This document shows, in pieces, positions 14,794 to 30,426 of a stretch of DNA of 64,000 nt; the stretch's first letter is position 1; the number at the start of each line of letters is the position of its first letter. The DNA lies in the IMG/VR virus record IMGVR_UViG_3300044846_005229, positions 124,001-188,000 of that record; one strand, written 5' to 3'. A model generated the notes under the pieces. That model saw only the letters and a program-made list of their open reading frames with translations, did not search any database and had not been told where the DNA came from. The translations under genes were made by a program, and so were the position numbers.

Positions 14794-14822
14794 GTGTTTT
14801 CAGTTTGCCCTAGTTTGAGTTT

Positions 14823-15497: not shown

Positions 15498-16094
15498 TTT
15501 TTTCTCCGGGGTGTCTGTCTATTGTAGCATAGTGCTGGGGGGTTGGGGTTTGCGGGTCGGGTGCCTCGGGATGGATGCCAGGGGTTGGATTCCAGGGGTT
15601 GGATTCCAGGGGTATCGTTGACTCCTAGGGGTGAGGTGGACAGTTTGTTAAGTGTCCATCTGACCTAAAGGAGTATCGTGCCAGGGAGTTTGGTGCCCAA
15701 GGGTTAGTGCCAGTATTAGACTTTGGGTGCGTTTTATGAGTAATGTGGAACCTCAGGGTGCTTTTTGCGAGTAATGTGGAACGCCCCAAAATAAAAATCG
15801 AAAATTCAATCCTTGAGATCGACTGCAGCGGAACGGAGTTACTCCTAAAAAAATTAAAAATTTTAGGACCTAGTTGAAATCCATCCAAAAAATTCTACAT
15901 TTGAATGCATATTATGCACCCTACTACTATAATCGCATATAAATTATTTAATAGAGTGTACTTATGTTAGTTGTACAATCAATAAGTTTTTCTTATTCTT
16001 AGGTACAATCAATGAGTTAAGGGCCAGAAGACAAAAAAAAAGGGGGGATAACCCTAAGGCAATCCCCCATTCTTTGTACTAAGTTTATCGCCAA

Positions 16095-16433
16095 TCAATC
16101 ATTCTTGGCCTTCCATGCACGCAACCGGCTAATTGCCTCCTCTACGCTGCTGGCATTAGACTTGCGGAATTTGGCCGTTTTGCTATAGGAAAACATTTCA
16201 ATCTTCCCACCCCCGATGGAAAACATTGCGTAGCGGGAATTGTGGAAGATTCCGTTAATCCATTCTTCCTTAGGGTCTAGGGATACCTTGACGATTAGGG
16301 AAGCGTTTTGCTCACCGCCAAGGGTAGACCTTTGCACAGAAGAAACCGGGAAGGTGGCATTCAGGGAAGCAGCCAGGGTGTCGCGATCGGTTTCGGTCGG
16401 GATGAAGGCAGTTGCGAGGGTTGCGGTGGCCAT
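16095..16433 (-). CDS. cassette gene, hypothetical
   Basis: TTGCGC-N17-TATAAT promoter; hairpin plus T-run at 16032-16070. Confidence 0.75.
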   Translation of the reverse strand: MATATLATAFIPTETDRDTLAASLNATFPVSSVQRSTLGGEQNASLIVKVSLDPKEEWINGIFHNSRYAMFSIGGGKIEMFSYSKTAKFRKSNASSVEEAISRLRAWKAKND

Positions 16434-16511
16434 GGGGCGCTCCGGTGGGTGACCCTGTAATTATAGCACGAAAGGGAAGGGGGCGCAAGCCCCCCAACCC
16501 CCGGCCATCAC

Positions 16512-16808
16512 TCACACAGCAGGGACCCGGCTACCGGCAGCGATCACCCCTTTGCCTTTCATCTCATCCAGCAGGGTAACGAAAGCGGCAGCGATGGCGT
16601 TCTTGGTGGCACGACCGGTTAGCTCAACCCGGAAACTCCGGCAGCTGAAGGGCAGGCATGTGAACATGCTGTAGCCGGTGCGGGTCTCTACAGTGCCCTC
16701 ACTGGCAGTAACCCTAGCAGGGCGGCCAGCGGGCTTGTAGAAGGTTACCTGGAAGACAGCTCCAGGGTTGTCAAGGCTGTTCACGTAGAAGGAATTGGGG
16801 GTTGCCAT
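16512..16808 (-). CDS. cassette gene, hypothetical
   Basis: Start MATPNS; promoter at 16845. Confidence 0.7.
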   Translation of the reverse strand: MATPNSFYVNSLDNPGAVFQVTFYKPAGRPARVTASEGTVETRTGYSMFTCLPFSCRSFRVELTGRATKNAIAAAFVTLLDEMKGKGVIAAGSRVPAV

Positions 16809-16895
16809 TGCGGTTCGGGGTGGTTGCCGTTGGTTGACTCTGTAATTGTACCATACAGCAGGCAGGGGGGCGCAAGCCCCCAACCACTCAAGGCA

Positions 16896-17228
16896 TCAAA
16901 TGGCCAGGGCTCGGACGCCTATGATCTTGCCTTCCCCGTCTCTCACTACGTTCTGGGGGCCAGTATCTGGGCGGTAAAGATCGGTCCGGTTGGGGGCTGC
17001 CTGTTGAACCAACATAGAAACAACAAAAATAGTACCCTCTTCGGGATCAGGGAGATTCTCTACATCCCCAAAAGTAGTCCGGGTGACGGGGATTCCATTA
17101 ATTTTGAATACCTCTTCTGTTACTGAAGATACCCGTGCCGCAGGAGCGGTTGGGGCAATAGTAAAGACTTCTCCGTTCTCCTTGTACAGATGAAGGGGGT
17201 GGGGGGTGAGGTTGATGATGGTGGCCAT
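16896..17228 (-). CDS. cassette gene, conserved viral NLTPH-motif protein
   Basis: IINLTPH...LPDPEEGTIFVVS...VRD.EGKIIG pattern recalled from diverse viruses. Confidence 0.75.
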   Translation of the reverse strand: MATIINLTPHPLHLYKENGEVFTIAPTAPAARVSSVTEEVFKINGIPVTRTTFGDVENLPDPEEGTIFVVSMLVQQAAPNRTDLYRPDTGPQNVVRDGEGKIIGVRALAI

Positions 17229-17311
17229 TGCGGCGTTCCGGTGTGGTTGACTCTGTAATTATAGCACAAAGGGGAAGGGGGGCAACCCTAAGGCAAACCC
17301 CAGGCCATCAC

Positions 17312-17560
17312 TCACACGGCGGGCAGGTAAATCTCTAGGGTATAGGTAACCTCAGCCTCATTATAGGCAGCCAAGGTATCGGCCAGCTCCCCAAGTGACA
17401 CATAGTCGCTGTATTCACCATCATCTACAAGGAAATCGACCTCATCGCCATCGGCAGGTTCTTCCGACAGGAAGGGAGCGCAGAACGGGCTCAGCGTAAC
17501 GGGCAAGGTGGCGAGGATTTCAGCCAGGGTAGGAGCAGTGGGGGCGGTTGCGGTAGCCAT
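17312..17560 (-). CDS. cassette gene, highly acidic protein
   Basis: EEPADGDEVDFLVDDGEYSDY; no K or R in the sequence. Confidence 0.7.
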   Translation of the reverse strand: MATATAPTAPTLAEILATLPVTLSPFCAPFLSEEPADGDEVDFLVDDGEYSDYVSLGELADTLAAYNEAEVTYTLEIYLPAV

Positions 17561-17628
17561 GGTGCGGTCTCGGTGGGTGACTCTGTAATTATAGCACGAA
17601 AGGGAAGGGGGCGCAAGCCCCCCACAAG

Positions 17629-17808
17629 TTAGAATCTGATGACGGGATGGCCGGGGTCAAGAGTGTCACATGCTTCAGTTGTGAAAACCAACTTAACTTT
17701 CTGGCCAAAATGCTCATCAATTCCCTCGTCATAAACTGTAACGTTAGAGTCTAGTTGTTCATCGGTGAATTGTTGCAGTTGCTGAAGCAGTTCCCGGTAG
17801 GTAATCAT
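17629..17808 (-). CDS. conserved cyanophage small protein (59 aa)
   Basis: MITYRELLQQLQQFTDEQLDSNVTVYDEGIDEH...TLDPGHPVIRF, hand-translated. Confidence 0.7.
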   Translation of the reverse strand: MITYRELLQQLQQFTDEQLDSNVTVYDEGIDEHFGQKVKLVFTTEACDTLDPGHPVIRF

Positions 17809-17962
17809 TGCGGTTCGGTGTGGGACCCCTTAATTATTACACATCGGTAGGCAGAACGCAAGAGGCCGGGTCGTTTGTTTGCGTTTTGTGACAGTGCCAC
17901 GCGAGTAGTATGTTTGTACTAACTGACCCGGTATCAATACCAGTAGGCAATGAGTTTGCCTA

Positions 17963-17997
17963 AGTATAAAAAAAAGAGGGGGCTGTCAACCCCCCCT
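17963..17997 (-). terminator. terminator hairpin with embedded promoter
   Basis: AGGGGGG-TTGACAG-CCCCCCT followed by T-run; TTGACA-N16-TATACT. Confidence 0.6.
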
Positions 17998-18019
17998 AAC
18001 TCAACTATCATTCTTACCA

Positions 18020-18256
18020 TCATTCGCAAACTTTCGGTAGTACGGTACCATGCACCAAATAGCCATACCTTTCGATGCCATACTTGTGCAAAATATGCAC
18101 ATTGGGCCATGATTCGCCTTGTCCCCAAGTACCTGACTGACTCATACGCTCAAAAGCACATTCAACGCTGTTACGCAGCCAGGAATGATCGATACGGGAT
18201 GCTGATGCCGCTTGGTTGCTGCGGTAGTTGCGGTACTTGGGGGCGGGGAATGCCAT
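18020..18256 (-). CDS. cassette gene, hypothetical
   Basis: Start MAFPAPK; promoter at 18286. Confidence 0.55.
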   Translation of the reverse strand: MAFPAPKYRNYRSNQAASASRIDHSWLRNSVECAFERMSQSGTWGQGESWPNVHILHKYGIERYGYLVHGTVLPKVCE

Positions 18257-19183
18257 TGTTGCCGGTGGTTGGTTGGCTCCGTAATTATAGCACATTGCCT
18301 CGGGGGTTGGGGCCCCGGATTGCTGACTCCCAAGGTGTGGTGGACAGTTTGTAAACTGTCTATTTGACTTCGTGAGTTTGACTTTTAGGGTTTGATTCTG
18401 GGGTGTGTTTTCGGGGTCAATGTGGAATCTCAGAGTGCTTTTTGCAGGTAATGTAGAATGCCTAATTTGAAAAGTCTGAAAGTCAACCGCTGAGATCGAC
18501 TGCAGGGCAACGGAGTTACTCCTAAAAAAATTAAAAATTTTAGGACCTAGTGAAAAACGATCCAAAAAATTCTACATTTGAATGCATATTCTGCACCCTA
18601 GGGTCTTTATATACACTTTTTCGCGAATATATGTATAATAAGTGTTTATTCTATGTTGTTATAGTTTGTTGTTGATGAGTCCAAGTAATAAACAACTGGG
18701 ATACGGTCTCAACAGTCTCAGTTAAGTATCGGAATGATGTCACACTTCAAGAGTAAGCAGATGGGTGCGTTTTTCCAGTAATGTAGAAACCCGGGGTGCA
18801 TTTTGCCGGTAATGTAGAATGCCCCAAATTAAAAACCTGAAATTCAATCCCTGAGATCGACTGCAGGGGAACGGAGTTACTCCTAAAATTTTTGAATTTT
18901 TTAGGACCTAATGGAAAACCATCCAAAAAATTCTACATTTGAATGCAAATTCTGCACCCTACTACTATATACTCGCGTAAAAATTATTTAATAGAAGACT
19001 CTTATCTTAATGTCTAGACAGATAAGTAATTCTTATCAATCTAATCCCCCATCAAACCGCAATGTTGTGGGCTATTCGAGGATGCTAACCGGAGTCTCAC
19101 CAAATAGCAAAGGGGCCGATGCCTAAGCACCAACCCCCAAACATTAAACTAAGGTCAATCTAAGGCCAAACCAAAGTCCGAAT

Positions 19184-19369
19184 TCAGGTATAGAAACGAA
19201 TCTGAGCCAGGAAGCACTCCCGGCGTTGCTTGCGGAGGATGGTGCGGATGCGTTTCGCCTGCGTGAGGGTCCACACTCGATTGCCAACGGGCTCAGACCA
19301 CGGTTTGCGGGTGATTTCCTGAACGGTATAAAAGATGCGGGTTTTCTTGGTTGCGATTGCGGTGGCCAT
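19184..19369 (-). CDS. cassette gene, basic small protein
   Basis: Start MATAIATKK; promoter at 19404. Confidence 0.65.
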   Translation of the reverse strand: MATAIATKKTRIFYTVQEITRKPWSEPVGNRVWTLTQAKRIRTILRKQRRECFLAQIRFYT

Positions 19370-19523
19370 TGTGGCGGTGTTGGTTGGTTGGTGACAGGTG
19401 AATTGTAGCATGGTGGCCGGGGGCTGTCAATGCCGTTGTGGCAAGGGGGCCCAGTTCTCAAAATTTTCGGAGGGGGCGTTAGCCCCTTGCCATCTGGTTA
19501 TAACCCTCTGGCTACCATCCCTA

Positions 19524-19590
19524 GGCATCAATCCCAGGGCATCAATCCCAGGGCATCAATCCCAGGGCATCAATCCCAGGGCATCATCCC
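19524..19590 (+). repeat. 14-bp tandem repeat gcatcaatcccagg (4-5 copies)
   Basis: Direct reading; related units at 38440-38500. Confidence 0.8.
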
Positions 19591-19786
19591 CTAGGCTAGG
19601 CCGTGAGAACTTCGGGTATATACCCCCTGTCCTAATCAGCCACCCAGCATCCACAAGGTCTTGGGCAGCATCGAGAACGCCCGCAACGTGGAAGTAGCCG
19701 ACAAGACCCACCGTATCAACGGATACACCTGGGCGGTTCAGGAAGTACAGCTTAAGGGACTCGCGGATCCACTCAGGGGATTTCAT
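19556..19786 (-). CDS. cassette gene, possible winged-helix fragment
   Basis: Start MKSPEW; AAQDLVDAGWL; C-terminus runs into tandem repeat. Confidence 0.5.
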   Translation of the reverse strand: MKSPEWIRESLKLYFLNRPGVSVDTVGLVGYFHVAGVLDAAQDLVDAGWLIRTGGIYPKFSRPSLGDDALGLMPWD

Positions 19787-19946
19787 GGTTGCTTGGGGTG
19801 AGACTACAGTAGTATAACACAAAGGGGCCAGGATTGCCTATGGGTGATGGCAATGGCAGTATAGCACAAAAGGCCAGGGGTACAAGCCCCCTAGCCCAGT
19901 GAATGCAACGGTTTCGTCACCCTTCTGAATTCAATAGATGGGAGTC

Positions 19947-20177
19947 TCACCAGTTCATAGCAATTTCCTGGGCAGTTGCCCCGAAAAAGTATAACACCAA
20001 CTCTCTGCGACCGCGAATATTCAGGTTCAAGATGGTGCAAGCCCGATTAAGCTCATCGCCGTCGGCCTGAACTTCCTCCACTTCGCTAGGGGCCAGGGTC
20101 CTGAGGGAAGAACTCAGGTGGGAGTCTCCGATGTAACCCGATATGCGACGGCCGGTGTTAAGGGTGACGTGAATCAT
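19947..20177 (-). CDS. cassette gene, paralog of 21031-21264
   Basis: MIHVTLNTGRRISGYIGD vs MIYVTLSTGHRISGYIGD. Confidence 0.75.
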   Translation of the reverse strand: MIHVTLNTGRRISGYIGDSHLSSSLRTLAPSEVEEVQADGDELNRACTILNLNIRGRRELVLYFFGATAQEIAMNW

Positions 20178-20265
20178 TGGGGTCCGGGGTGGTTGCCCTT
20201 GGTTGGTTGACTCTGTAAGTGTAGCATAGGGCCGACACGGTGTCAACCCCCCCCCCCTTGGGCTT

Positions 20266-20568
20266 TCAGCGACACTGACTTAGCGGTGTAGGATCAAAGT
20301 GAATATCCCGCTCGATGCGGAGCCCAGCTGGTCCCCGAGTAGCTTCTAGGTCATTCAGGTTGAAGTACCCAAGTTCTCGTGCCTGGCCGATAACCAACCC
20401 AAAGCATTGACCCGTCGCAGGGTCCATCTCGGTGAGGTACCATGTCCAATTGCCCCAGGGCGTGAAAAATTTGGCATAGGCGGTAGCCTCCATGCCTTTG
20501 CCGTCTTGTGCGTACAGGGCTGGGACCTTGGTGGCGATTGCCATGGTTAGTAGCTTGGTGTTGGCCAT
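20266..20568 (-). CDS. DUF2958 family protein
   Basis: KFFTPWGNWTWYLTEMDP...FGLV...ELGYFNL. Confidence 0.8.
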   Translation of the reverse strand: MANTKLLTMAIATKVPALYAQDGKGMEATAYAKFFTPWGNWTWYLTEMDPATGQCFGLVIGQARELGYFNLNDLEATRGPAGLRIERDIHFDPTPLSQCR

Positions 20569-20731
20569 GGTTGCCCTTGGTTGGTTGACTCAGGTATTAT
20601 AGCACGGATGGGGATGGTGCCGTTACGATCTGAAACAACAGGCATGGACCACAGGCAGGCAGGCCCCCGCCCGACAAGTTGACTTCGGTATTATAGCACA
20701 GGCAGGCAGGGGGCGCAAGCCCCCCCACAGG

Positions 20732-20917
20732 CTAGATATCAGAAGGGGGATTCTCAGTCAGCTCGAAGCTATAGGCCCCAGTGTCGTTATTGCCGTGGCT
20801 GGAAGTATACCCTTCCCTAACAAGACGCAGCGCTTCCTCTAGGGCAATTTCGATGTCATCCAGGGTTTGACCGCTGGCAGTCAATTTCAGGACAAACGGG
20901 GCGTTAAGATCGTTCAT
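20732..20917 (-). CDS. cassette gene, hypothetical
   Basis: Start MNDLNAPF; promoter at 20946. Confidence 0.7.
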   Translation of the reverse strand: MNDLNAPFVLKLTASGQTLDDIEIALEEALRLVREGYTSSHGNNDTGAYSFELTENPPSDI

Positions 20918-21030
20918 GGCGGTTCGGTGGTTGGTGACAGGGCAATCATAGCACAGGCAGGCATGGAACGCAAGCCCCTTGCCCTCCGAGCAAACAATCA
21001 AACTGGCAAGTTCCCAGTTAGCTCCGACCC

Positions 21031-21264
21031 CTAAACATCTCCACCCCAATTCATAACAATTTCCTGGGCGTTTGCCCCGAAAAAGCGGAACACACGGGTA
21101 TGAACCTTACGGTTCAATATAGTGCAACAACCGAATAATTCAACACCGTCTGCCTGAACTTCCACTACTTCACTAGGATTCAGGGATTTAAGTTCTGATA
21201 TCAGGCGGGGGTCCCCGATGTAACCAGATATGCGATGGCCGGTGCTAAGGGTGACGTAGATCAT
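21031..21264 (-). CDS. cassette gene, paralog of 19947-20177
   Basis: Shared EVQADG.EL...C.IL...FFGA.AQEI.MNW. Confidence 0.75.
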   Translation of the reverse strand: MIYVTLSTGHRISGYIGDPRLISELKSLNPSEVVEVQADGVELFGCCTILNRKVHTRVFRFFGANAQEIVMNWGGDV

Positions 21265-21330
21265 TGTGGTTCGGGTGGTTGCCGTTTGGTGCGGTACCCC
21301 GTAATTATAGCACGGGAGGCCGGGGGGGGG

Positions 21331-21642
21331 CTAGTCGGACGGTAAAGCGTCAAGCGCCAAATCCCAGATCCAGTGGGTTTCGTCGCCCAGCGGGTCGCCA
21401 GCAAACTCAAAATTGGCTACCGCCGCTTCGGCTAGTTGAGTAGCGGTTTCGTAATCACTTGCGTTTGCTCGCATCCAAATTCTAACGCTTTGTTTACTTA
21501 CCGATGCCAATTTAGTAGGTGAATAGCCCAAATTCCCATGGCGCTGCAATGATAAGGACTCAATTTCTGATTTCCTCTGATTGCGTTCTCTTGCCGCCGC
21601 CATACTGTTTCGTAAATAGCGGTTTTCGGATCTTGCGCTCAT
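21331..21642 (-). CDS. cassette gene, hypothetical
   Basis: Start MSARSEN; promoter at 21686. Confidence 0.65.
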   Translation of the reverse strand: MSARSENRYLRNSMAAARERNQRKSEIESLSLQRHGNLGYSPTKLASVSKQSVRIWMRANASDYETATQLAEAAVANFEFAGDPLGDETHWIWDLALDALPSD

Positions 21643-22149
21643 TTTTCTAAGGAAGCGAATGGGCCGGGTTTGGTCCCGATGCACTAATCATAGCACATTG
21701 CCACGGGGTTGGGGCCTTGGGTAGGGGCCTTGGGGTTGTTGACTCCTGGGGTGTGGTGGTTGCTGTGGGGTTGCTGTGGGGGTTGAGTATCTGGGGTTGT
21801 TGACTCCCAAGGTGTGGTGGACAGTTTGTAAACTGTCTATTTGCGTTGGGAGTTTGGTACCGAGGGTGTGTTTTCGGAGTTAATGTGGAACCTCAGGGTG
21901 CATTTTCCGGGTAATGTAGAATGCCCCAAATTGAAAACCTGAAATTCAATCCCTGAGATCCATTGCGGGGGAACGGAGTTACTCCTAAAAAAATTAAAAA
22001 TTTTAGGACCTAGTGAAAAACGATTCAAAAAATTCTACATTTGAATGCAAATTCTGCACCCTGGGGCTCTTTATATACACTTTTTCGCGAATATATGTAT
22101 AATGAGTGTTTACCTTATGTTGTTATAGTTTGTTGTTGATGGGTCCAAG

Positions 22150-22335
22150 TAGTCAACAACTGGGAGTGGTCCCAACAGTCTCAGTTAAGTATCGGAATGA
22201 GTCTACATCGAGTAGTTTACAGTTGGTATTAGTCCCAACAGTCTCAGTTAAGTATCGGAATGAGACCCAACCGAACAGTCAACAACTGGAATACGGTCTC
22301 AACAGTCTCGTTTCAGTCCCATAATGAGACCACAC
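22150..22335 (+). repeat. ~63-bp tandem units with GTCTCA-N14-TGAGAC hairpin (also ~18690-18745 and 25650-25880)
   Basis: cagtctcagttaagtatcggaatga recurs between paired 200-bp elements. Confidence 0.85.
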
Positions 22336-22795
22336 CTCAGGGTAAATATGGCAGGTATTTTCGGAGTTAATGTGGAACCTTGGGGTGCGTTTTGTGAGTA
22401 ATGTGGAATGTTGAGTGCAGTTTTCGGAGTAATGTGGAAACCACAAAATCAAAAAACCAAAATCCATTCCTTGAAATCGACTGCAGGGCAACGGAGTTAC
22501 TCCTAAAATTTTTGAATTTTTTAGGACCTAATGAAAAAACGATCCAAAAGTTCCACATTTGAATGCAAATTCTGCACCCTACTACTATATACTCGCGTAA
22601 AAATTATTTATAGTACACCCTTATCTAAATATCCATAATCAATAAGTTACCCTTATCTATGTACCAACCAATGAGTAATAGCGGTAAAGCAACAAAAAAA
22701 GGAGGGTCACCTTTCGGCAGCCCCCATATCAGTAAGTATTTATATTTACTGGGTGAAATTAGACCCCGGAACCAACAACCCCGGCAGCCCGACCT

Positions 22796-23573: not shown

Positions 23574-23792
23574 TCAATTAAAGCCGAGGATAAACTTACG
23601 TGCCGCTTCCGGCGTATTAAGTTGTCCGCCCATCATCATCATCAAGCCCAAACTGCAACCTACGTGTCCAGCTGTTTCAGGGTGCTTTTCAAGGTCGCTA
23701 AACATCGAGGAGAGGGCATTTTCTGCATCACCACGATCGCAGTATTCAAGGGCGCGTTTCTTGCACCATTCTAAGTGTTCGGATCGGTTTAT
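23574..23792 (-). CDS. cassette gene, conserved phage protein, apparent ATA start
   Basis: (I)NRSEHLEWCKKRALEY...SMFSDLEKHPET; promoter at 23842. Confidence 0.6.
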   Translation of the reverse strand: MNRSEHLEWCKKRALEYCDRGDAENALSSMFSDLEKHPETAGHVGCSLGLMMMMGGQLNTPEAARKFILGFN

Positions 23793-24001
23793 TTGGGGGG
23801 TGTTGGTGTCGGGTGTTTGACTTTGGATGTTTGTCAATGGCAGTATAGCACGGATGGTCAGGGGACCGTGGTTGCCATTATGGTTGGTGACGCTTCGTAA
23901 AGACAGGCACGGCAAGTTGCCGATGGGCTTTTGGGTTTTGTTGCATTTCGCAACAACAGGCAAGGAAGGGCCACCGGCAGGCAACCCCCCCCCCCCCAAG
24001 A

Positions 24002-24271
24002 TCATGCCATGAACTTAGCAATAGCCTCTTCGGCATCGGCACCATCGGCACCATGATTTACCATAAACTCCAACACAAGGCCAGTATCACTATCGAATCG
24101 CGTCAGAAGGGAATCCAACAGTTCATCTTGACTGACACCACCAGAGGCATTCTGAAGCTCTGACATCCTGCTGTCCATGGCTTCATTCCTAAGCTCATCA
24201 AGGCTCATCAAATCGACATAACGTTGGCAATGGGCTTCGGCGATCTCACGAATCAAGGATTGGTCGAACAT
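24002..24271 (-). CDS. cassette gene, acidic helical protein
   Basis: Promoter at 24301. Confidence 0.7.
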   Translation of the reverse strand: MFDQSLIREIAEAHCQRYVDLMSLDELRNEAMDSRMSELQNASGGVSQDELLDSLLTRFDSDTGLVLEFMVNHGADGADAEEAIAKFMA

Positions 24272-24397
24272 GGTTGCGTGTGCGGTTGGTTGACTTCGGT
24301 ATTATAGCACAGGGGGGGCCACGGTGCGAGGGATGTTACAGGGGTAACAACAGGCACGGCAAGGGGCCAGGGTTCACAACCCCGACCCCCAGGACAG

Positions 24398-24772
24398 TCA
24401 ACCAAGGGCCACAATGGCATGTAAATTGGTGCGCCACGTTCCAGGCAGCTTCTCACCACGACGACCTACGATCACGGGCAATTCCCCAACCATCTCAACT
24501 ACGGTATCAATCTCAAATACTTGCAAGGTGGCCGCCAGCCAGGTTCCAAACCAGCGAGTCCGACCCGTGGCCTTGGCAATGTAACGGCAGCCATGGGGGC
24601 CTTCCATGGCAAACTCTCCTTCCTCCAAACAAAGATCATGGGGCGCATCAGCCAGGACATCCCAGTGTCCCCACCAGCCTTTACGGACGCCACCAGGGGC
24701 CTTCTCGCAGGGCTCAGCGGTGAATGAACCGATGCGGTTGATGGGTGAGGTGGCGGCGGTTGCGAATGCCAT
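24398..24772 (-). CDS. cassette gene, hypothetical
   Basis: Start MAFATAA; promoter at 24802. Confidence 0.65.
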   Translation of the reverse strand: MAFATAATSPINRIGSFTAEPCEKAPGGVRKGWWGHWDVLADAPHDLCLEEGEFAMEGPHGCRYIAKATGRTRWFGTWLAATLQVFEIDTVVEMVGELPVIVGRRGEKLPGTWRTNLHAIVALG

Positions 24773-24866
24773 TGTTTCCGGTGGGTGCGATACCTTGAAA
24801 TTATAGCATGTTTCCAAGGGGGTCAGGGTGCATCCCAACCACAAAACTGCCTATTAGCAACAAAAC

Positions 24867-25202
24867 TTAACCCATAATGCCCCCAGGCCAACGTCCTCCC
24901 GGCGGGGTGCGCTCTGATGGGGATAGTTCGGGTGTTTCATCATAATAGCTAGGACACAATTTGGCGAGGCGCTCTGCGTCGGAGACGCATTGGCAGCATG
25001 GATTGTGCCTATTTTCCGCCATATAATTAGCGCCGCGCTTTGTTCTGAATGGTCCGATAACTGCCATGAAGTGTGGGGTATTGGCTTTGGTAGGGGTAAC
25101 TACCGATTTGAAAACCTCCAATTTACCTTGGCCGTATGGCAAACCCACATAGAATTTTGCCCGTTGGGGTGTGTTGGTGGTTGAGGGGGTTGCGGTAGCC
25201 AT
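24867..25202 (-). CDS. cassette gene, hypothetical
   Basis: Promoter at 25233. Confidence 0.65.
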   Translation of the reverse strand: MATATPSTTNTPQRAKFYVGLPYGQGKLEVFKSVVTPTKANTPHFMAVIGPFRTKRGANYMAENRHNPCCQCVSDAERLAKLCPSYYDETPELSPSERTPPGGRWPGGIMG

Positions 25203-26264
25203 CGTTGCGGTGTCGGTTGGTTGGCTTCGTAATTATAGCACATGGACGGGTCTGGATGCGGTTCGGCATGTTGGTGCGGTTCGGCATGTTGACTCCTGGG
25301 GTGTGGTGGACAGTTTGTAAACTGTCTATTTGCGTTGGGGGTTTGACTTTAGGGGCTTGATTCCAGGGTGTATTTTAGGGGTTAATGTATAATCCGGGGT
25401 GCGTTTTCCGGGTAATGTAGAATGCCTAATTTGAAAAGTCCGAAAGTCAACCGCTGAGATCGATTGCAGGGCAACGAGTTTACTCCTAAAATTTTTGAAT
25501 TTTTTAGGACCTAGCGAAAAACCATCCAAAAAATTCTACATTTGAATGCATATTTTGCACCCTGGGGTCTTTATATACACTTTTTCGCGAATATATGTAT
25601 AATAAGTGTTTACCTTATGTTGTTGGTGAGTTGAATAGTTGACGACTGGGTGTGATCTCGTCAGTCTCAGTTAAGTATCGGAATGAGTTCACATCGAGTA
25701 GTCTACAGTTGGCATCAGCCCCAACGGTCTCAGTTAAGTATCGGAATGAGACTCCACCAAATAGTAAACAACTGGGGTACGGTCTCAACAGTCTCGTTTC
25801 AGTCCCACAACAAGACTCATCCAAATAGTAAACAACTGGGGTACGGTCTCAACAGTCTCACTTCAATCTCACAATGAGATCACACTTCAAGAGTAAGCAG
25901 ATGGGTGCGTTTTTCCAGTAATGTAGAAACCCAGGGTGCATTTCCCAAGTAATGCAGAAACCCTAAAATCAAAAACCCGAAACTCAATCCCTGAGATCGA
26001 CTGCAGCGGAACGGAGTTACTCCTAAAAAAATTAAAAATTTTAGGACCTTTTCAAAAACAGCATGAAAAATTCTACATTTGAATGCATATTTTGCACCCT
26101 ACTACTATATACTCGCGTAAAAATTATTTATAGTACACTCTTATCTAAATATCCATAATCAATAAGTTATCCTTATCTATGTACCAACCAATGAGTAATA
26201 GCAGTAAGGCAACAAAAGAAAGGGGGGAATCACCCTAAGGCAATCCCTCCCCTAAAAACAGCAC

Positions 26265-26450
26265 CTATGCCCAAATGGTCTCAACACGGGCATCATGCCC
26301 TTTCATCTTCATCGCTTCGGCGATTCTCTGAGCCACGTTCCGATCATGGTAATCCGCCCTGGTGGTATAGCCAGGAGCCCCAGAACCAGGGGCAATCGAA
26401 CCAGTGGCAATCGAACCAGGGGCGATGGTGACACGGTGTAGTTGGGCCAT
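26265..26450 (-). CDS. cassette gene, hypothetical
   Basis: Promoter at 26484; hairpin plus T-run at 26213-26250. Confidence 0.6.
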   Translation of the reverse strand: MAQLHRVTIAPGSIATGSIAPGSGAPGYTTRADYHDRNVAQRIAEAMKMKGHDARVETIWA

Positions 26451-26518
26451 GGTGCGGTTTGGTGCGGTTGGTATGGACGTATCTTAGCACAGGTCCGAGG
26501 GGAACGTCAACCCCCCCC

Positions 26519-26950
26519 TTACCCGTACCACCCATACTGGCGAACCCTCTCCAAATAGGTCTCCCAAACCGACGGATCCATGGCACCTGCCGTTGTCTTA
26601 AAGTGATGGGAGAAAAACGTAATGGCAAGCTCCATATTGCGCCTACCAACAGGATTAGCAGAATGAATGACCACAGCCGGTGGAATAAACCCACCATCAA
26701 AACCATTCTCATACACAATTTGCTCAATCCACTTGCAAACATCCATGCCAGTTCCCCTAGCGTCATCCCCGAGATCATGATCCAAGGATACAACTTCGAC
26801 ATTGCCAGTCTTCAGCAATTCGATAACCTCATCAGGCCAATAGCAACGGACCCACCCATCAGGGGTAGGCCTGATATCATCGAGAAATACTTTCATTGCC
26901 TTGGGTTTAGGTAGACTGTGGGCGTGGTTGCCATTGGGGGTGGTTGCCAT
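26519..26950 (-). CDS. cyclic-phosphate-processing receiver-domain protein
   Basis: KVFLDDIR, SLDHDLG, GTGMDV..W, IHSANPVG motifs. Confidence 0.8.
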   Translation of the reverse strand: MATTPNGNHAHSLPKPKAMKVFLDDIRPTPDGWVRCYWPDEVIELLKTGNVEVVSLDHDLGDDARGTGMDVCKWIEQIVYENGFDGGFIPPAVVIHSANPVGRRNMELAITFFSHHFKTTAGAMDPSVWETYLERVRQYGWYG

Positions 26951-27445
26951 TGGGGGTGGTCCGGTGGGTGACGGTAGGGGAATTATAGCATAGGCCTGGC
27001 AGGTTAGTTGGTGGCCCCGTAATTATAGCACAGGGGGGTCAGGCTACGGGTGCCGTTACATTCCGTAACAACAGGTACGGCAAGGAGTCACTGGATGGCA
27101 ACCCCTGTAAAGAATTGGCCAGGTTGTGGGGTTATGCTTTCGCTCCTGAAGGGTAGCCAGGCGAAGAAGGGCAGCCCTGCGGCTGATAATCCTAATTCCA
27201 TTTCCCACTATTTGCCTTCACGTCTACCTGTATTTTGGGTTGTTTAGCCATTGTAGCATGGGCCTGGCAGTGTCAACTCATGGCGTTAACTGAGTTTACT
27301 GCAACATGGTTGCCGTTGGTTGGTGGCGATTGGGTTTGAACCCATTGTTTGCGGGGGGCTGGTGGGCTGGTGATAGGGGAATTGTAGCATGGCCCGGCAG
27401 GTTGGATGGTTTACTTTGGTAGTATAATACGAACCCGATAGGCAG

Positions 27446-27811
27446 TCAATCCTTAGCGGTAATCTCAGCACCTTCCAGTAGTTTGGAAGCTAGGTCAGTA
27501 TCACCCGCCTTAATTGCGTTTTGGATGCGTTCTTTCAAGGTTAGCTCGTATGACCATTTTCGGCCGTTGATGGTGCCCCTGACATTGCCCCCGACAGAGC
27601 CCTCGACAGAGCCCCCGACAGAGCCCCCGACAGAGCCCCTGACATTGCCCCCGACAGAGCCCCTGACATTGCCCCCGACAGAGCCTAGGACATCACCCAA
27701 GACACCACCCCTGACATTGCCCCCGACAGAGCCCTCGACATCATTTACCCGCCATTCACCGCTGATTCTGGTGAAAGTAACTAGTTTTTTAATTTCTTCA
27801 ATGCTTGGCAT
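27446..27811 (-). CDS. repeat protein (GSVGGNVR repeats, beta-solenoid-like)
   Basis: 12/24-bp tandem coding repeats at 27575-27740. Confidence 0.7.
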   Translation of the reverse strand: MPSIEEIKKLVTFTRISGEWRVNDVEGSVGGNVRGGVLGDVLGSVGGNVRGSVGGNVRGSVGGSVGGSVEGSVGGNVRGTINGRKWSYELTLKERIQNAIKAGDTDLASKLLEGAEITAKD

Positions 27812-28002
27812 TTCAATTTAGGGGTTTGATGATGTCATGGTGTGTCCGGTGGTTGGTGACAAAGGAATTATAGCATGGGTCCGGCAGACAGTCAACCCTT
27901 AGGGACCTGGGGCCACACCCCAAACAGCAAAAAAAAGGGGGGGGCCGATGCCAACGGCACCAACCCCCCCCCCAAGCAATCGGCCGATACCGACGGCTCC
28001 AA

Positions 28003-28260
28003 TCAGCTAGCCACTGCAAGCAGCCGATCAGCCACTGCACCCTTCGCAGTACGCTTCCCATCGAGATAATACAAGGTATAAACTCGCCCCGGCTTCACAC
28101 TGGGGGTTACCGTAACGGTCAGGGCCTTGCCGTTGATGCGGATGGCAGTTTCGGCCTTTGCGCCGGATGCTGTAGCTTGTTGCACGGTGTTGGCTTCAGT
28201 GGTATCAAGGCGGGCAAGCAGGGTGTCAAACTTACGGATGGTCAGAGGGGGAGTAGCCAT
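28003..28260 (-). CDS. cassette gene, hypothetical
   Basis: Start MATPPLT; promoter at 28307. Confidence 0.65.
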   Translation of the reverse strand: MATPPLTIRKFDTLLARLDTTEANTVQQATASGAKAETAIRINGKALTVTVTPSVKPGRVYTLYYLDGKRTAKGAVADRLLAVAS

Positions 28261-28425
28261 GGTTGTGGGTGGGTTGTGTTGTGGGGTGAATCCCCGGGAC
28301 CTTGCCATTATAGCCCAGGTGAGAGACGGTTGTCAATGCTTGACTGGTGGCAAGATCCCCCGAGGGTCACCATATTATGGCATATTGCCGGAGTTATTGC
28401 AACCTGCTGCGTTGGCGACCAGGGG

Positions 28426-28522
28426 TTGACAACCGCCGGAATCCACGCTATAATATGCACATAACCAAACGAGGGGCGAGGTAGCCCTGAAGACGAAAAA
28501 GGTCGCCACGGAACCTGCTTGC
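28426..28522 (+). ncRNA. plus-strand sigma70 promoter and putative structured RNA, copy 1
   Basis: TTGACA(28426)-N17-TATAAT(28449) then GGGGCGAGGTAGCCCTGAAGACGAAAAAGGTCGCCACGG; no ORF. Confidence 0.55.
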
Positions 28523-28638
28523 TTATAGTTATTACCGGACAGTAAAAAAAGGGGGGTTGACCCTCGGGTTTTATCCCAGAGTCATAGCCCCGGAGCCACA
28601 ACCCCGGAGTCACAACCCCAGAGTCAAACCCCACGCAC

Positions 28639-29091
28639 TCAAGAATTACGGGCAATGACTTTTTTCAGGAAGTCCAAACCATCTTCATTGGTAACAAAGA
28701 AATGGGATCCAGCCTCATCACCTAGCAATAGTTGGCCAGCTGTAGAAGGCAATTTGGAGAATCCTACTTCCCCCGCCATCACTTGGGCGGTTCCCGCGAT
28801 ACAATGGACCGTACCACATTCGTTGAAGGCTTCTTTACCCGTAGTTTCTTTGCCAAGGTCGATACGAAACATTAAGGGACCCCATGCCTGATGCCAATTA
28901 GCCATATCAAAGTTTTTCAAATCACGCTCTACAATCCAACGCGCCACATGGTGAAGGTTAGCCCTTTGTTGCTCGGGGGTGAGTTTGATGCTGAGGTTTT
29001 CAGGAATATGGGGCAACGGGGGAAGGCCGGGAGTAGTATCCAGCTTCTGGAGATTTAGGCGAGTAGCTTCAGTTAGGGAAAGGGTTTTCAT
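28639..29091 (-). CDS. cassette gene, CGT..CIAG-motif phage protein
   Basis: Start MKTLSL; CGTVHCIAGTAQ. Confidence 0.7.
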   Translation of the reverse strand: MKTLSLTEATRLNLQKLDTTPGLPPLPHIPENLSIKLTPEQQRANLHHVARWIVERDLKNFDMANWHQAWGPLMFRIDLGKETTGKEAFNECGTVHCIAGTAQVMAGEVGFSKLPSTAGQLLLGDEAGSHFFVTNEDGLDFLKKVIARNS

Positions 29092-29252
29092 GGTTTTGGA
29101 AGGGGGGGTTAGTTGCCTGGTTGGTTGGTTGGTTGACTCTGTAATCATAGCACAGGGCCAGGGGAAGGTCAACCCTTAGGGACCTAGGGCCACAACCCCG
29201 GAGTCAATACCCTGGAGTCATAGCCCCCAATCCCCAATCCCCAATCCCAAAG

Positions 29253-29726
29253 TCATGCCGCAGCAAACTGCTTATTCCGGGAATAGAAACGCTCACAGCC
29301 ATACTTGACCGCAATTTCATCCAAACTACCCGGATTGGAGCGGCTCCGGCCCAGCCCTGCAGGCTTCCAGAACCAGCATTTCCGGCCACTATGCCAGCGG
29401 CACCCCAGAGCCTTAAGGTCTTCCTTAACGGGCTTGGTATCACCCGTGACCCATACCCATAGGCCAATCAGGCTGATATCAAGGTTGGGAATCTTAAGCA
29501 ATTCCGCAATCTGATCCATGATGGCCTGCTCGGTTTTTTCCGTATAGCGGTAGGTCCGGCCATCGTCCTCTTGACCGTTGCAGGCTGCCAGGGCCTCGTG
29601 GTAGGCGGCATTAAGGGCCTTCATGGTTTCCAGATCGCCACCAAGATCAGGGTGGTGCTTGCGAGCCAGATCACGGTAAGCGCTTTTGACTTGCTCAACA
29701 GTGGTGAGGCCAGTGAAGAATGTCAT
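29253..29726 (-). CDS. J-domain (DnaJ-like) protein
   Basis: VKSAYRDLARKHHPDLGGDLETMKALNAAY with intact HPD. Confidence 0.9.
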   Translation of the reverse strand: MTFFTGLTTVEQVKSAYRDLARKHHPDLGGDLETMKALNAAYHEALAACNGQEDDGRTYRYTEKTEQAIMDQIAELLKIPNLDISLIGLWVWVTGDTKPVKEDLKALGCRWHSGRKCWFWKPAGLGRSRSNPGSLDEIAVKYGCERFYSRNKQFAAA

Positions 29727-29966
29727 TGCCGGTTCCAGGTGGTGGGTGACTTTGGTAGTGTAGCATGGTTGCCGGTGGGTCGTCAACCCCCCCCCTTTTT
29801 TAGGGGAAGGTTAAAACCGCTACCTGCTGACCCATGAATTATAGCATGTCCGAGGGCCAACTGTGGATGGCCGGAAGTTAGTGCCCATAGGCTGACAGCG
29901 GGTTCGGGGGGCCAACTGTGGATGGCCGGGAGTTAATGCTCATGGGCCGACACATTGCCGAAGGGG

Positions 29967-30064
29967 TTGACAAGACTAGGGTAGTCGCCCTATAATAAGC
30001 AAACAATCAGAGAAGGGGCGGGGTAGCCCTGAAGACGAAAAATGTCGCCACGGCCCCTACTTGC
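29967..30064 (+). ncRNA. plus-strand sigma70 promoter and putative structured RNA, copy 2
   Basis: TTGACA(29967)-N18-TATAAT(29991) then AGGGGCGGGTAGCCCTGAAGACGAAAAATGTCGCCACGGCCCCT. Confidence 0.55.
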
Positions 30065-30426
30065 AATTAAAGAGTTTATGCCATTGAGTTTATGCCATGG
30101 TGCATTTTGCGAGTAATGTAGAAGTCTAGGGTGTGTTTTCGGAGTTAATGTAGAATGCCAAGGGTGCTTTTTCTGGGTAATGTGGAAACCCCCAAATTGA
30201 AAATCGAAAATTCATTCCCTGAGATCCGTTGCAGGGCAACGGAGTTACTCCTAAAATTTTTGAATTTTTTAGGACCTAATGAAAAAACGATCCAAAAGTT
30301 CCACATTTGAATGCAAATTCTGCACCCTACTATCATATATTCGCGAAAAGTATATTTAATAGAAGACTCTTATGTATAGTTCCATAACCAATAAGAAATC
30401 CTTATCACTGCACCCTCCATTCAAAG

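What the first reader, a model, noticed from the sequence alone, without database searches (positions are those of the whole stretch)
15740..30330. Eight ~200-bp origin-like elements, arranged single-pair-pair-pair-single
Seen: each has 2-3 direct AATGT(A/G)GAA boxes about 31 bp apart (three helical turns), a conserved GAGATC..GCAGGGCAACGGAGTTAC block, a 26-bp A/T hairpin, one inverted box TTC(T/C)ACATT, TGCA-N5-TGCA, then an AT-rich tail. First members of pairs share tail X (ctttatatacactttttcgcgaatatatg). The others share tail Y (ctactatatactcgcgtaaaaattatt or close variants). They recur every 3-4 kb and encode no protein. Inference: the iteron, palindrome and unwinding-element layout suggests multiple replication origins or enhancers (comparable to baculovirus homologous regions), or partition, packaging or recombination sites.
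Basis: partly seen in the sequence, partly recalled or inferred. Interest (0 to 1): 0.75.

Follow-up and report, generated by a model that had tools for sequence, protein, structure and literature searches.

The report
Repeated boundary modules, jumbo cyanophage
Eight near-identical, non-coding DNA modules of about 250 bp, each a fixed-geometry cluster of protein-binding-like repeats, punctuate the early-gene region of an uncultured 279-kb lake cyanophage. They are real and conserved, but whether they act as promoter/operator hubs, enhancers or replication origins has not been tested.

Summary
There are eight same-orientation elements (single, pair, pair, pair, single) at window 15.7-30.4 kb. 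None occurs elsewhere in the 279-kb phage genome. Forty-six distinct copies occur in related lake-metagenome contigs.

The unit occurs 2-4 times directly and once inverted.

- Geometry is strict: units are 31 bp apart, and the inverted box lies 120 bp from the nearest direct box.
- The copies are fine-scale mosaics.
- No reading frame is conserved, Rfam gives no match, and the direct and inverted boxes do not covary.
- The elements therefore behave as DNA-level binding-site arrays, not as structured RNAs or genes.
- Each lies between the terminator of one early-gene cassette and the promoter of the next. This region holds 26 of the genome's 42 minus-strand TGnTATAAT promoters.
- The tails carry palindromic operator-like sites and sigma-70-like hexamers.

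Best reading (confidence about 0.35): looped, protein-bound regulatory boundary modules with a promoter in the tail. A multi-copy origin is the main rival (0.2). No initiator, recombinase or ParB was found, and no binding protein was identified. Function needs stranded RNA mapping, coverage profiling and binding assays.

The parts
15725..15960 (+). E1 (single, tail Y). Units 15725-15750 and 15756-15781; core block 15815-15845; A/T palindrome 15844-15867; inverted unit 15893-15921; tail with ATCGCATA at 15932.
18401..18645 (+). E2 (first of pair, tail X). Units 18401-18427 and 18433-18458; core 18492-18522; palindrome 18521-18544; inverted unit 18570-18598; tail X with TTCGCGAA at 18620 and TATACA-N18-TATAAT at 18610-18639.
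18763..19000 (+). E3 (second of pair, tail Y). Units 18763-18788 and 18794-18819; core 18853-18883; palindrome 18882-18905; inverted unit 18931-18959; TTGAAT-N18-TACTAT at 18939-18968.
21864..22108 (+). E4 (first of pair, tail X). Units 21864-21890 and 21896-21921; core 21955-21985; palindrome 21984-22007; inverted unit 22033-22061; TATACA-N18-TATAAT at 22074-22103.
22352..22620 (+). E5 (second of pair, tail Y). Three boxes at 22369, 22400 and 22431; core 22473-22503; palindrome 22502-22525; inverted unit 22551-22579.
25366..25608 (+). E6 (first of pair, tail X). Units 25366-25392 (degenerate box) and 25397-25422; core 25456-25486 (3 mismatches to the consensus block); palindrome 25485-25508; inverted unit 25534-25562; TATACA-N18-TATAAT at 25574-25603.
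25903..26140 (+). E7 (second of pair, tail Y). Units 25903-25928 and 25934-25959; core 25993-26023; palindrome 26022-26045; inverted unit 26071-26099.
30098..30370 (+). E8 (single, tail Y). Three boxes at 30115, 30147 and 30179; core 30221-30251; palindrome 30250-30273; inverted unit 30299-30327; TTCGCGAA at 30340.
18710..18773 (.). One 63-nt linker unit between E2 and E3.
   Evidence: family D5
22173..22363 (.). Three tandem 63/64-nt linker units between E4 and E5.
   Evidence: D5, D10
25659..25849 (.). Three tandem 63/64-nt linker units between E6 and E7.
   Evidence: D5, D10
18343..18360 (+). 18-bp inverted repeat GACAGTTTGTAAACTGTC to the left of first members. It recurs at 21820-21837 and 25309-25326, and in degenerate form at 15639-15656. 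On the + strand it is followed by TATTTG, which makes it weakly terminator-like.
   Evidence: own reading
22620..22656 (.). CTTATC-N-AATAAG-N-CTTAT inverted boxes to the right of tail Y. They recur at 26140-26176 and 30369-30405, with variants to the right of E1 and E3.
29967..29996 (+). Perfect TTGACA-N18-TATAAT on the + strand, about 100 nt to the left of the first E8 unit and reading into E8.
16033..16065 (-). Example of the strong minus-strand intrinsic terminator (hairpin plus T9) that ends the upstream cassette just before each tail-Y element. Others lie at 19111-19138 and 26226-26247.

Best explanation
Each element is a cis-acting DNA module, not a gene or a structured RNA. It marks the boundary between two early-gene cassettes of a jumbo cyanophage.

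Proposed mechanism:
- A sequence-specific protein, probably phage-encoded, binds the two-part 26/27-bp units: 2-4 direct copies and one inverted copy.
- The inverted unit lies a fixed 120 bp from the nearest direct unit. The intervening DNA is A-tract-rich. Its midpoint carries an invariant 11-bp mini-palindrome (GGAGTTACTCC), with an 18-bp pure-A/T stretch immediately to its right. The bound proteins therefore close a small DNA loop or wrap.
- The inverted unit overlaps a sigma-70-like promoter in the tail: TTGAAT-N18-TAYYAT on the + strand in tail-Y copies, replaced by TATACA-N18-TATAAT in tail-X copies.
- That promoter region also carries palindromic operator-like sites (TTCGCGAA; GATAAG-N5-CTTATC).
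- The module would thus be a switchable operator/enhancer-promoter hub that controls transcription starting at the cassette boundary. The most likely product is an outward, antisense-direction (+ strand) transcript that helps time or shut off the neighbouring early cassette.

Shown: the anatomy, the strict geometry, conservation, absence of coding and of RNA covariation, and the position between terminator and promoter.

Inferred: protein binding, looping, promoter activity and its direction, and the regulatory outcome.
For: - Eight copies against 0.02 expected, all in one orientation, and only in this region.
- Geometry in 46 distinct copies from related lake contigs: unit spacing is 31 bp in 42 of 48 cases; proximal box to right anchor is 133 +/-1 bp in 43 of 43; compensating A-run indels keep the length constant.
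- Conservation is block-wise. Of 173 core columns, 67 are invariant in 39 distinct copies, while the 5-nt linkers inside units and a 20-nt segment vary freely. This points to selection on blocks rather than homogenisation alone.
- The A/G position of the direct boxes and the T/C position of the inverted box assort at random (my tally: about 17 matched, 15 mismatched). All strong mutual information is short-range. This is binding-site behaviour, not stem behaviour.
- The central 18 bp are always pure A/T but differ in sequence, with at least five forms. This suggests a structural rather than a sequence-specific role.
- Helix stability is lowest from that stretch through the tail.
- Every tail-Y copy in the window has TTGAAT-N18-TAYYAT. 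Across the relatives' copies (tail X and tail Y) the -35-like hexamer varies only in its last two bases (TTGAAT, TTGACG, TTGATG, TTGAGT).
- Tail X has TATACA-N18-TATAAT.
- The only two 12/12 sigma-70 promoters on the + strand of the whole genome lie in this array, and one reads into E8.
- Context: strong minus-strand terminators lie just upstream of the elements and TGnTATAAT promoters just downstream. Twenty-six of the genome's 42 such promoters lie in window 7-31.5 kb.
- The unit does not occur in clusters in 185,579 bacterial and archaeal genomes: 111 scattered single hits, about the chance level. The binder is therefore more likely phage-encoded.
- RNA-library contigs cover the elements while some neighbouring genes have none.
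Against: - No binding protein was identified.
- Promoter-like hexamers are easy to find in A/T-rich palindromic DNA. The same bases also give a -10-like TATAGT/TATGAT on the minus strand, 4 nt before GGGTGC, so the direction is unresolved.
- 9/12 promoter matches are common here: 43 found against 20 expected.
- The tail motif occurs nowhere else in the genome, so it is not a general phage promoter.
- The + strand carries no genes, so any + transcript must be non-coding.
- First members of pairs and E1 have no evident + strand promoter upstream.
- RNA contigs have no strand, come from related strains, cross the putative start sites, and could include DNA carry-over.
- The 120-bp spacing is about 11.4 helical turns, which is not an integral number.
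Confidence: 0.35

Rival explanations
1. Multi-copy replication origins (or dual origin/enhancer elements like baculovirus hrs). An initiator binds the iteron-like units and wraps the bent core. The A/T stretch and A/T-rich tail then melt, possibly helped by a transcript from the tail promoter acting as an R-loop primer, as at T4 oriF/oriG.
For: - Iteron-like direct units on a 31-bp repeat plus one inverted unit, a pure A/T centre and a low-stability tail.
- Promoter-like hexamers lie next to the A/T region.
- The elements lie in the early-expressed region.
- The cumulative GC skew has an extreme at the right end of the array.
- The copies are insulated from read-through transcription by terminators.
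Against: - Eight copies within 15 kb of a 279-kb genome give little benefit as origins.
- The skew extreme is a maximum, which by the usual convention marks a terminus. The region is also compositionally odd, at 52-56% GC.
- No DnaB_C helicase family was found, and no initiator among the roughly 60 proteins scanned.
- The boxes are not DnaA boxes: 0 perfect, and 10 of 83 within one mismatch.
- Copy number at a given position differs between strains (single or pair) and cassettes come and go, so no individual copy is essential.
Confidence: 0.2
2. RNA-level element. The module is transcribed with the genes, on the minus strand, from a -10-like box 4-9 nt upstream of GGGTGC. It acts as an RNA: a leader that loads an antitermination factor to read through the many terminators of the next cassette (nut/put-like), or a platform or sponge for an RNA-binding protein.
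For: - RNA-library contigs cover the elements at depths similar to expressed neighbouring genes.
- No minus-strand terminator separates the element from the next genes.
- Single sequences fold better than shuffles, with z of -3.0 (minus strand) and -4.3 (+ strand).
- The downstream cassettes contain a terminator after almost every gene.
Against: - The consensus fold is only about -21 kcal/mol over 211 nt, with almost no covariation.
- The box positions that would pair assort randomly.
- No Rfam match, even at E<=5.
- The good single-sequence folds are what any inverted DNA repeat gives.
- The 31-bp periodicity and the pure-A/T centre of variable sequence are more DNA-like.
- Each downstream gene has its own promoter.
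Confidence: 0.15
3. Functionally neutral or selfish repeats. They persist through concerted evolution and matter mainly as homology patches for cassette shuffling, as a larger analogue of T4-type PeSLs.
For: - The copies are fine-scale mosaics of a few segment alleles.
- The E2/E3 pair is a single hybrid element in a relative.
- Singles and pairs swap, and cassettes differ between strains with breakpoints at the elements.
- Contigs break at the elements.
Against: - Gene conversion alone would homogenise all columns. Instead, invariant blocks alternate with freely varying linkers, and lengths are kept by compensating indels.
- The strict common orientation and the position between terminator and promoter also argue for function.
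Confidence: 0.1
4. Topological or architectural sites. Candidates are strong phage-gyrase or topoisomerase sites or domain insulators that relieve supercoiling in a very densely transcribed one-directional early region (like the Mu strong gyrase site or BIMEs), or DNA-entry pause sites like the T5 injection-stop region.
For: - The phage encodes GyrA.
- The region holds 26 strong same-direction promoters.
- The elements recur every 3-4 kb in terminator-promoter gaps.
- They have a fixed span of about 150 bp with bent arms.
- The T5 iss region is likewise an untranslated cluster of repeats and palindromes at fixed spacing in an early region (bioRxiv 10.1101/866236).
Against:
- Sequence-specific two-part units are not needed for gyrase.
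- T5 has one such region, not eight.
- The assembly is circular (124-bp overlap), so entry polarity is unknown.
Confidence: 0.08
5. Miniature transposable elements (terminal inverted units with multiple transposase-binding sites, as at Mu or Tn7 ends), or partition or packaging sites.
For: - Direct and inverted copies of a binding unit lie at the two ends.
- A transposase-like ORF exists elsewhere in the genome.
Against: - All copies share one orientation, one region and one type of position.
- No empty site or target duplication was seen in relatives.
- The left boundary is fuzzy, with 2-4 units and degenerate half-units.
- No ParB_N was found.
- Eight clustered pac sites make no sense for headful or cos packaging.
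Confidence: 0.04

Closest known systems
Baculovirus homologous regions (hrs)
   Same: Multi-copy, intergenic and non-coding. Built of repeated units containing a palindrome. Very similar within one genome. They are hot spots of rearrangement between strains. They are bound by a virus-encoded factor (IE-1) and act as enhancers and as origins in transient assays (PMC4535591, PMC2834656).
   Different: - hrs are dispersed round the genome; these elements are clustered in 15 kb.
- hr units are tandem copies of about 60-70 bp, each with its own palindrome; here 2-4 direct units and one inverted unit flank a unique core.
- The host is a bacterium and there is no sequence relation.
- Neither enhancer nor origin activity is shown here.
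Iteron-type origins and their control regions (lambda ori, P1, pSC101, RK2)
   Same: Direct repeats phased on the helix, an adjacent A/T-rich low-stability region, and an extra inverted repeat that overlaps a promoter. In pSC101 the inverted repeats serve as the operator of repA (textbook knowledge).
   Different: - There is no adjacent initiator gene, and none was found in the genome.
- There are eight copies.
- The units are two-part, 26/27 bp on a 31-bp period, rather than 17-22-bp iterons.
- No DnaA boxes.
T5 injection-stop (iss) repeat region of the pre-early region
   Same: A large untranslated stretch inside a phage early region, full of direct repeats, inverted repeats and palindromes. 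The spacer length is invariant and the spacer DNA is bent. It is conserved across relatives (bioRxiv 10.1101/866236).
   Different: - T5 has one region per terminal repeat, built round eight DnaA boxes. Here there are eight separate modules and the boxes are not DnaA boxes.
- Two-step injection is unknown for this phage.
PeSLs (promoter-early stem-loops) of T4-type phages
   Same: Repeated regulatory sequences in a hyperplastic early region that flank small gene cassettes and mediate their shuffling by homologous recombination (PMC2839356, PMC4122927). The small genes here have just such terminator-hairpin plus TGnTATAAT repeats (D3/D4/D6).
   Different: PeSLs are short composite terminator/promoter motifs. 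The 250-bp modules are a distinct and far more complex layer that recurs only every 3-4 kb.
P1 parS and the GalR-HU repressosome (looped or bent nucleoprotein sites)
   Same: Two kinds of half-site read by one protein and arranged on both arms of a bend (parS). Two operators about 113 bp apart are looped with an architectural protein at an A/T-rich apex (gal). Both points are textbook knowledge.
   Different: - No ParB was found.
- The element has eight copies.
- It is larger.
- Nothing is known of the binder.

Membership tests
Iteron-containing replication origin | Several direct repeats phased on the helix next to an A/T-rich unwinding region | tested here: met
   2-4 units at 31-bp spacing (42 of 48). 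An 18-bp pure A/T stretch and a tail of lowest helix stability.
Iteron-containing replication origin | A cognate initiator (Rep, O or DnaA-type) encoded nearby or in the genome | tested here: inconclusive
   None among the roughly 60 proteins scanned. No DnaB_C family was found. Most ORFs have no family match.
Iteron-containing replication origin | Replication starts there (marker frequency, nascent strands, plasmid assay) | not testable with these tools
   Only assembled contigs with flat depth were available. The GC-skew extreme at the array is a maximum in a compositionally atypical region.
Host DnaA-box cluster (oriC-like, datA-like, T5 iss-like) | Boxes matching TTWTNCACA, or the cyanobacterial TTTTCCACA (PMC4674748) | tested here: not met
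   0 perfect matches. Of 83 direct boxes, 10 are within one mismatch and the rest have 2-4 mismatches. All 39 inverted boxes have 2-4 mismatches.
Baculovirus-type hr (enhancer/origin) | Several dispersed intergenic copies of repeat units, each with an imperfect palindrome | tested here: inconclusive
   The elements are multi-copy and intergenic and contain palindromes. However, they are clustered rather than dispersed, and the unit architecture differs.
Baculovirus-type hr (enhancer/origin) | Binding by a viral transactivator, with enhancer activity | not testable with these tools
   No binder was identified.
Structured non-coding RNA | A conserved secondary structure supported by compensatory changes | tested here: not met
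   The consensus fold is about -21 kcal/mol with 2-3 doubly changed pairs. The box positions that would pair assort randomly. Mutual information is only short-range.
Structured non-coding RNA | Match to a described RNA family | tested here: not met
   Rfam at gathering thresholds and at E<=5 gives nothing on the elements.
Structured non-coding RNA | A discrete, abundant transcript | tested here: inconclusive
   Metatranscriptome contigs cover the elements. They carry no strand, come from related strains and cross the element borders.
MITE or transposon ends | Sharp ends with target-site duplication, empty sites in relatives, varied positions and orientations | tested here: not met
   The copies share one orientation, one region and a fuzzy left end. 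No empty site was seen in 18 related contigs.
Site-specific recombination sites (att, attC, dif-like) | A cognate tyrosine or serine recombinase, with crossover confined to a core spacer | tested here: not met
   No Phage_integrase or Resolvase family in the genome. Exchanges are patchy along the whole element.
Partition site (parS/sopC-like) | A cognate ParB/ParA system | tested here: not met
   No ParB_N match in the genome. ParA was not searched.
PeSL (T4-type promoter-terminator cassette) | A short composite of terminator stem-loop plus early promoter, flanking exchangeable small genes | tested here: not met
   That description fits the separate 50-nt repeats (D3/D4/D6), not the 250-bp modules. 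The modules do share the role of exchange point.

The most novel reading that the evidence does not exclude
The modules are switchable cassette boundaries, a phage counterpart of viral hr elements. A phage protein that reads the two-part units loops each module and fires its outward (+ strand) promoter. Each block of early genes is then silenced by a cassette-long antisense transcript that ends at the hairpin before the next module. The same transcript or complex may also open the A/T centre to prime replication. This would be a new mechanism for the early-to-middle switch in a large phage, and the first hr-like system in a bacterial virus.
Probability: 0.15. Interest if true: 0.8.

Novelty: new variant of a known kind. 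Interest (0 to 1): 0.6.

Why it matters
Large phages carry long hyperplastic early regions whose organisation and timing are poorly understood. Here a 25-kb early region is divided every 3-4 kb by an elaborate, strictly built, conserved non-coding module that has no relative outside one clade of lake cyanophages.

If the modules are operator/enhancer hubs, origins or both, they would give:
- a handle on early-gene timing in uncultured cyanophages;
- a new DNA-binding protein and site pair;
- a bacterial-virus parallel to the hr elements of large eukaryotic DNA viruses.

They also show how gene cassettes are swapped between co-occurring strains. The system becomes directly testable once a host-phage pair or stranded metatranscriptomes are available.

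Tried and rejected
- **Rfam:** gathering thresholds on the whole window, and E<=5 on 18.2-22.7 kb and 28.4-30.5 kb. Nothing fell on the elements.
- **Consensus RNA folding of both strands:** weak, with no covariation. A hairpin enclosing GGTGCnTTTT inside each unit looked possible, but it is complementary in only about half of 73 distinct units. I rejected it.
- **Coding:** no frame is open in all copies. The + strand ORFs across the 63-nt repeats change frame between pairs. I rejected coding.
- **DnaA boxes:** not met.
- **Recombinase, ParB and DnaB families:** absent.
- **Host-protein site:** the unit occurs only as scattered single hits in 185,579 bacterial and archaeal genomes.
- **Box-pair pattern in IMG/VR:** it found three further loci that are coding and unrelated, so chance matches.
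- **More distant relatives:**
  - the sequence model R1 found nothing in seven DUF4942-anchored loci;
  - it found nothing in four terminase-anchored fragments, which do not reach the early region;
  - in Synechococcus phage S-CBWM1 the single weak hit lies inside a homing-endonuclease gene.
- **Tail motif as a general phage promoter:** it occurs only in the elements. ACTTAAC, which both repeat families share, is not enriched upstream of other genes.
- **'Flip-flop' inversion of the A/T loop:** considered and dropped. The central TTGAA keeps its orientation while the flanking A and T runs change (my reading).
- **GC skew:** ambiguous.
- **Read laying:** gave contigs without strand, so transcript direction is unresolved.
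- **Not run:** no complex or structure prediction was run, because no candidate binder exists.

Full report
**Where the window lies.** The window is bases 124,001-188,000 of a 279,339-bp IMG/VR virus record. The record's 'terminal repeat' is only a 124-bp assembly overlap, so the assembly is circular and the physical ends are unknown.
- All large ORFs are on the minus strand.
- The phage is a myovirus, with tail sheath, baseplate J and terminase genes.
- It encodes a family-A DNA polymerase with a Pol-gamma-type exonuclease domain, GyrA and ribonucleotide reductase, Cys- and Tyr-tRNA synthetases and a beta clamp, and two sigma-70-family genes.
- Its terminase is closest to Synechococcus phage S-CBWM1 (54% identity), followed by the S-TIM5 group.
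- It carries pentapeptide-repeat and DUF1517 proteins, and it is held in many lake-water metagenomes.
- A picocyanobacterial host is therefore likely. This is an inference.

**Check of the observation.**
- The conserved block matches eight times, all on the + strand, against 0.02 expected.
- The copies align over about 300 nt and sit as single, pair, pair, pair, single.
- A sequence model built from 39 distinct cores finds only these eight copies in the whole genome.

- The 9-bp box is the right half of a 26/27-bp two-part unit: GGGTGY, 12-13 nt that start with nTTTT, then AATGTRGAA.
- The 'inverted box' is a complete inverted unit. Read on the minus strand it is GGGTGC, 13-14 nt, then AATGTAGAA.
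- Between the proximal direct unit and the inverted unit lie:
  - an A-rich spacer;
  - a nearly invariant 45-bp centre, made of GAGATC...TGCAGGGnAACGGAGTTACTCC with the mini-palindrome GGAGTTACTCC at the midpoint, followed by CCT, 18 bp of pure A/T and AGG;
  - a variable 20-nt A-tract segment.
- The 18 A/T bases occur in at least five sequence forms but always have the same length.
- The tails hold an imperfect palindrome round TTCGCGAA (or CTCGCGTA, or ATCGCATA).
- Tail X reads largely as tail Y inverted (my reading).
- To the right of tail Y lie CTTATC/GATAAG inverted boxes, and then the strong minus-strand terminator of the upstream gene.
- To the left of first members lies an 18-bp inverted repeat, GACAGTTTGTAAACTGTC.
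- Pair members are joined by one to three 63-nt tandem units.

**Relatives.** Pattern scans found the element in two IMG/VR contigs and 18 lake-metagenome stretches. This gives 46 distinct copies.
- Geometry is strict. Unit spacing is 31 bp in 42 of 48 cases. The proximal box lies 133 +/-1 bp from the right anchor in all 43 cases, so the inverted box is 120 bp from the proximal direct box. The palindrome lies 65 +/-1 bp from the anchor. Where A-runs differ in length, a second run compensates.
- Conservation is block-wise. Of 173 core columns, 67 are invariant, while the linkers inside units and the 20-nt segment vary.
- The copies are fine-scale mosaics of a few segment alleles. The E2/E3 pair is one hybrid element in a relative.
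- E8 and E1 are pairs in other strains, and whole cassettes between elements differ between strains.
- No empty site or target duplication was seen.

**RNA or DNA?**
- No frame is open in all copies.
- Rfam gives nothing.
- Consensus folds of either strand reach only about -21 kcal/mol with negligible covariation.
- The better single-sequence folds (z of -3.0 and -4.3) are what inverted repeats produce.
- The decisive test is the variable A/G position of the direct boxes against the T/C position of the inverted box. They assort at random, about 17 matched and 15 mismatched. All high mutual information is between neighbouring columns.
- The boxes therefore behave as degenerate binding sites, not as paired stems.
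- RNA-library contigs from two sediment metatranscriptomes do cover the elements, while some neighbouring genes have no cover. However, contigs carry no strand, come from related strains whose cassettes differ, and cross the element borders. Transcription is possible but unproven.

**Context.**
- TGnTATAAT occurs 42 times on the minus strand of the genome and 3 times on the plus strand. Twenty-six of the minus-strand sites lie in window 7-31.5 kb.
- Small genes there each have a terminator hairpin plus promoter repeat (D3/D4/D6), like T4-type PeSLs (PMC2839356, PMC4122927).
- Pfam names only a few of the genes: DUF2958, a cREC_REC receiver domain, a DnaJ-like domain and DUF7717.
- This is an early, hyperplastic, host-takeover-like region. 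Each module sits in the gap between a strong terminator and the next early promoter.
- The left half of the region (5.9-14.7 kb) uses a second repeat family in the same kind of gap. That family shares a GAGTT...GGTG building block with the left flanks of the modules.

**Promoter-like features.**
- All tail-Y copies in the window have TTGAAT-N18-TAYYAT on the + strand. The -35-like hexamer lies inside the invariant ACATTTGAATGCA. In relatives' copies it varies only in its last two bases.
- The inverted unit would then cover positions -45 to -12 of that promoter.
- Tail X lacks this site but has TATACA-N18-TATAAT, with the TTCGCGAA palindrome in its spacer.
- The only two perfect sigma-70 promoters on the + strand of the genome are at 28,426 and 29,967, and the second reads into E8.
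- The hairpin to the left of first members is followed by TATTTG on the + strand only.
- These points suggest regulated + strand (antisense-direction) transcription from the module boundaries. However, the same A/T-rich palindromic bases also give a -10-like hexamer on the minus strand 4 nt before GGGTGC, and 9/12 promoter matches are common here. The direction is unresolved.

**Tests of specific families.**
- DnaA boxes: none perfect, and most have 2-3 mismatches (consensus from PMC4674748 and bioRxiv 10.1101/866236).
- Tyrosine and serine recombinases, ParB_N and DnaB_C: absent.
- The unit is not clustered in any of 185,579 bacterial and archaeal genomes, so a phage-encoded binder is more likely than a host factor.
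- The GC skew has a cumulative maximum at the right end of the array and a minimum near 100 kb. This does not favour an origin at the array and may simply reflect the region's odd composition.
- More distant relatives could not be examined. Fragments anchored on the terminase do not reach the early region, and S-CBWM1 lacks the element.

**Verdict.**
- The feature is real, non-random, conserved and unusual.
- The best-supported statement is that these are DNA-level arrays of protein-binding sites with fixed architecture at early-cassette boundaries.
- I favour a looped operator/enhancer-promoter hub (0.35) over clustered origins (0.2), an RNA-level leader or platform (0.15), neutral recombination repeats (0.1), topological or entry-pause sites (0.08) and mobile, partition or packaging sites (0.04).
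- The nearest known analogues are baculovirus hrs, iteron origins with operator-type inverted repeats, and the T5 injection-stop repeat region. The feature is not a demonstrated member of any of them.

Noticed in passing
window 5900-14720: A second family of non-coding repeats of about 59 nt. It holds GGTGAGTTGAC..GGGTGyGATGTTACAAAACTTAACAT and a palindromic AGTAATACACTTGTACTAGCT block. It forms 7-8 clusters, each between a minus-strand terminator and the next TGnTATAAT promoter. GAGTT-N7-10-GGTG occurs 24 times on the + strand of the early region and never on its minus strand.
   Followed up: partly
window 7000-31500 (minus strand): About 26 repeats of a terminator hairpin plus an extended -10 promoter (TGCTATAAT), followed by a C/A-rich leader (ACAGAGTCAACCAACC..ATG) without a Shine-Dalgarno sequence. 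They resemble T4-type PeSL cassettes. A DNA-run contig joins two such promoters (18294 to 19381), which would delete the E2/E3 pair, but its anchor is only 21 nt.
   Followed up: partly
window 28426-28575 and 29967-30075 (+ strand): The only two perfect TTGACA-N17/18-TATAAT promoters on the + strand of the genome. Each is followed by a homologous 75-nt segment (79-84% identity). The first ends at a terminator-like hairpin, giving a possible + strand small RNA of about 100 nt. The second runs into E8. There is no Rfam match, and the ATG of a 24-codon ORF is not conserved between the two.
   Followed up: partly
window 38148-38348 (minus strand): Four copies of the T4-late-promoter-like octamer TATAAATA, spaced 66-67 nt apart in tandem, upstream of the gene at 36773-37567.
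   Followed up: no
whole genome (G000): Nine palindromic hexamers are completely absent although 6-24 of each are expected: ACGCGT, CCGCGG, CGCGCG, CTCGAG, GAGCTC, GCGCGC, GTCGAC, GTGCAC, TACGTA. GACGTC, GCATGC and GCCGGC are nearly absent. This is strong restriction-site avoidance. ATGCAT is depleted (11 against 38 expected), yet 4 of the 11 lie in the array region; E1, E2, E6 and E7 each carry one inside the inverted unit (GAATGCATATT).
   Followed up: partly
window 14424-14936: The tRNA-Met gene (14719-14793, minus strand) is flanked by four 58-nt tandem repeats (14424-14656) and four 29-nt tandem repeats (14823-14936).
   Followed up: no
window 27446-27811 and 19496-19593: Coding-region microrepeats. 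A 12-nt period gives a GSVGGNVR-type repeat protein (121 aa), with more copies in the relative L008. A 14-nt repeat (GGCATCAATCCCAG, five copies) lies at 19.5 kb.
   Followed up: no
genome 6445-7695 and 55274-58478 (outside the window; L031, L033): A 416-aa transposase-like ORF (phrog_506, E 2.5e-122). Two adjacent terminase-large-subunit-like ORFs of 472 and 576 aa.
   Followed up: no
genome 9748-10428 and 15927-16502 (outside the window): Two sigma-70-family genes (Sigma70_r2, E about 5e-9). The phage probably has its own promoter classes. Heptamers such as GGGTAAA and CTAAACC are enriched upstream of genes outside the early region.
   Followed up: partly
window 18882-18905 and the same block in all copies: The 18 bases between CCT and AGG are always pure A/T and always 18 long. 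They occur in at least five forms, including perfect A10T8 and A11T7 in relatives. The central TTGAA/TTAAA keeps its orientation while the flanking runs switch between A and T. Unexplained.
   Followed up: partly
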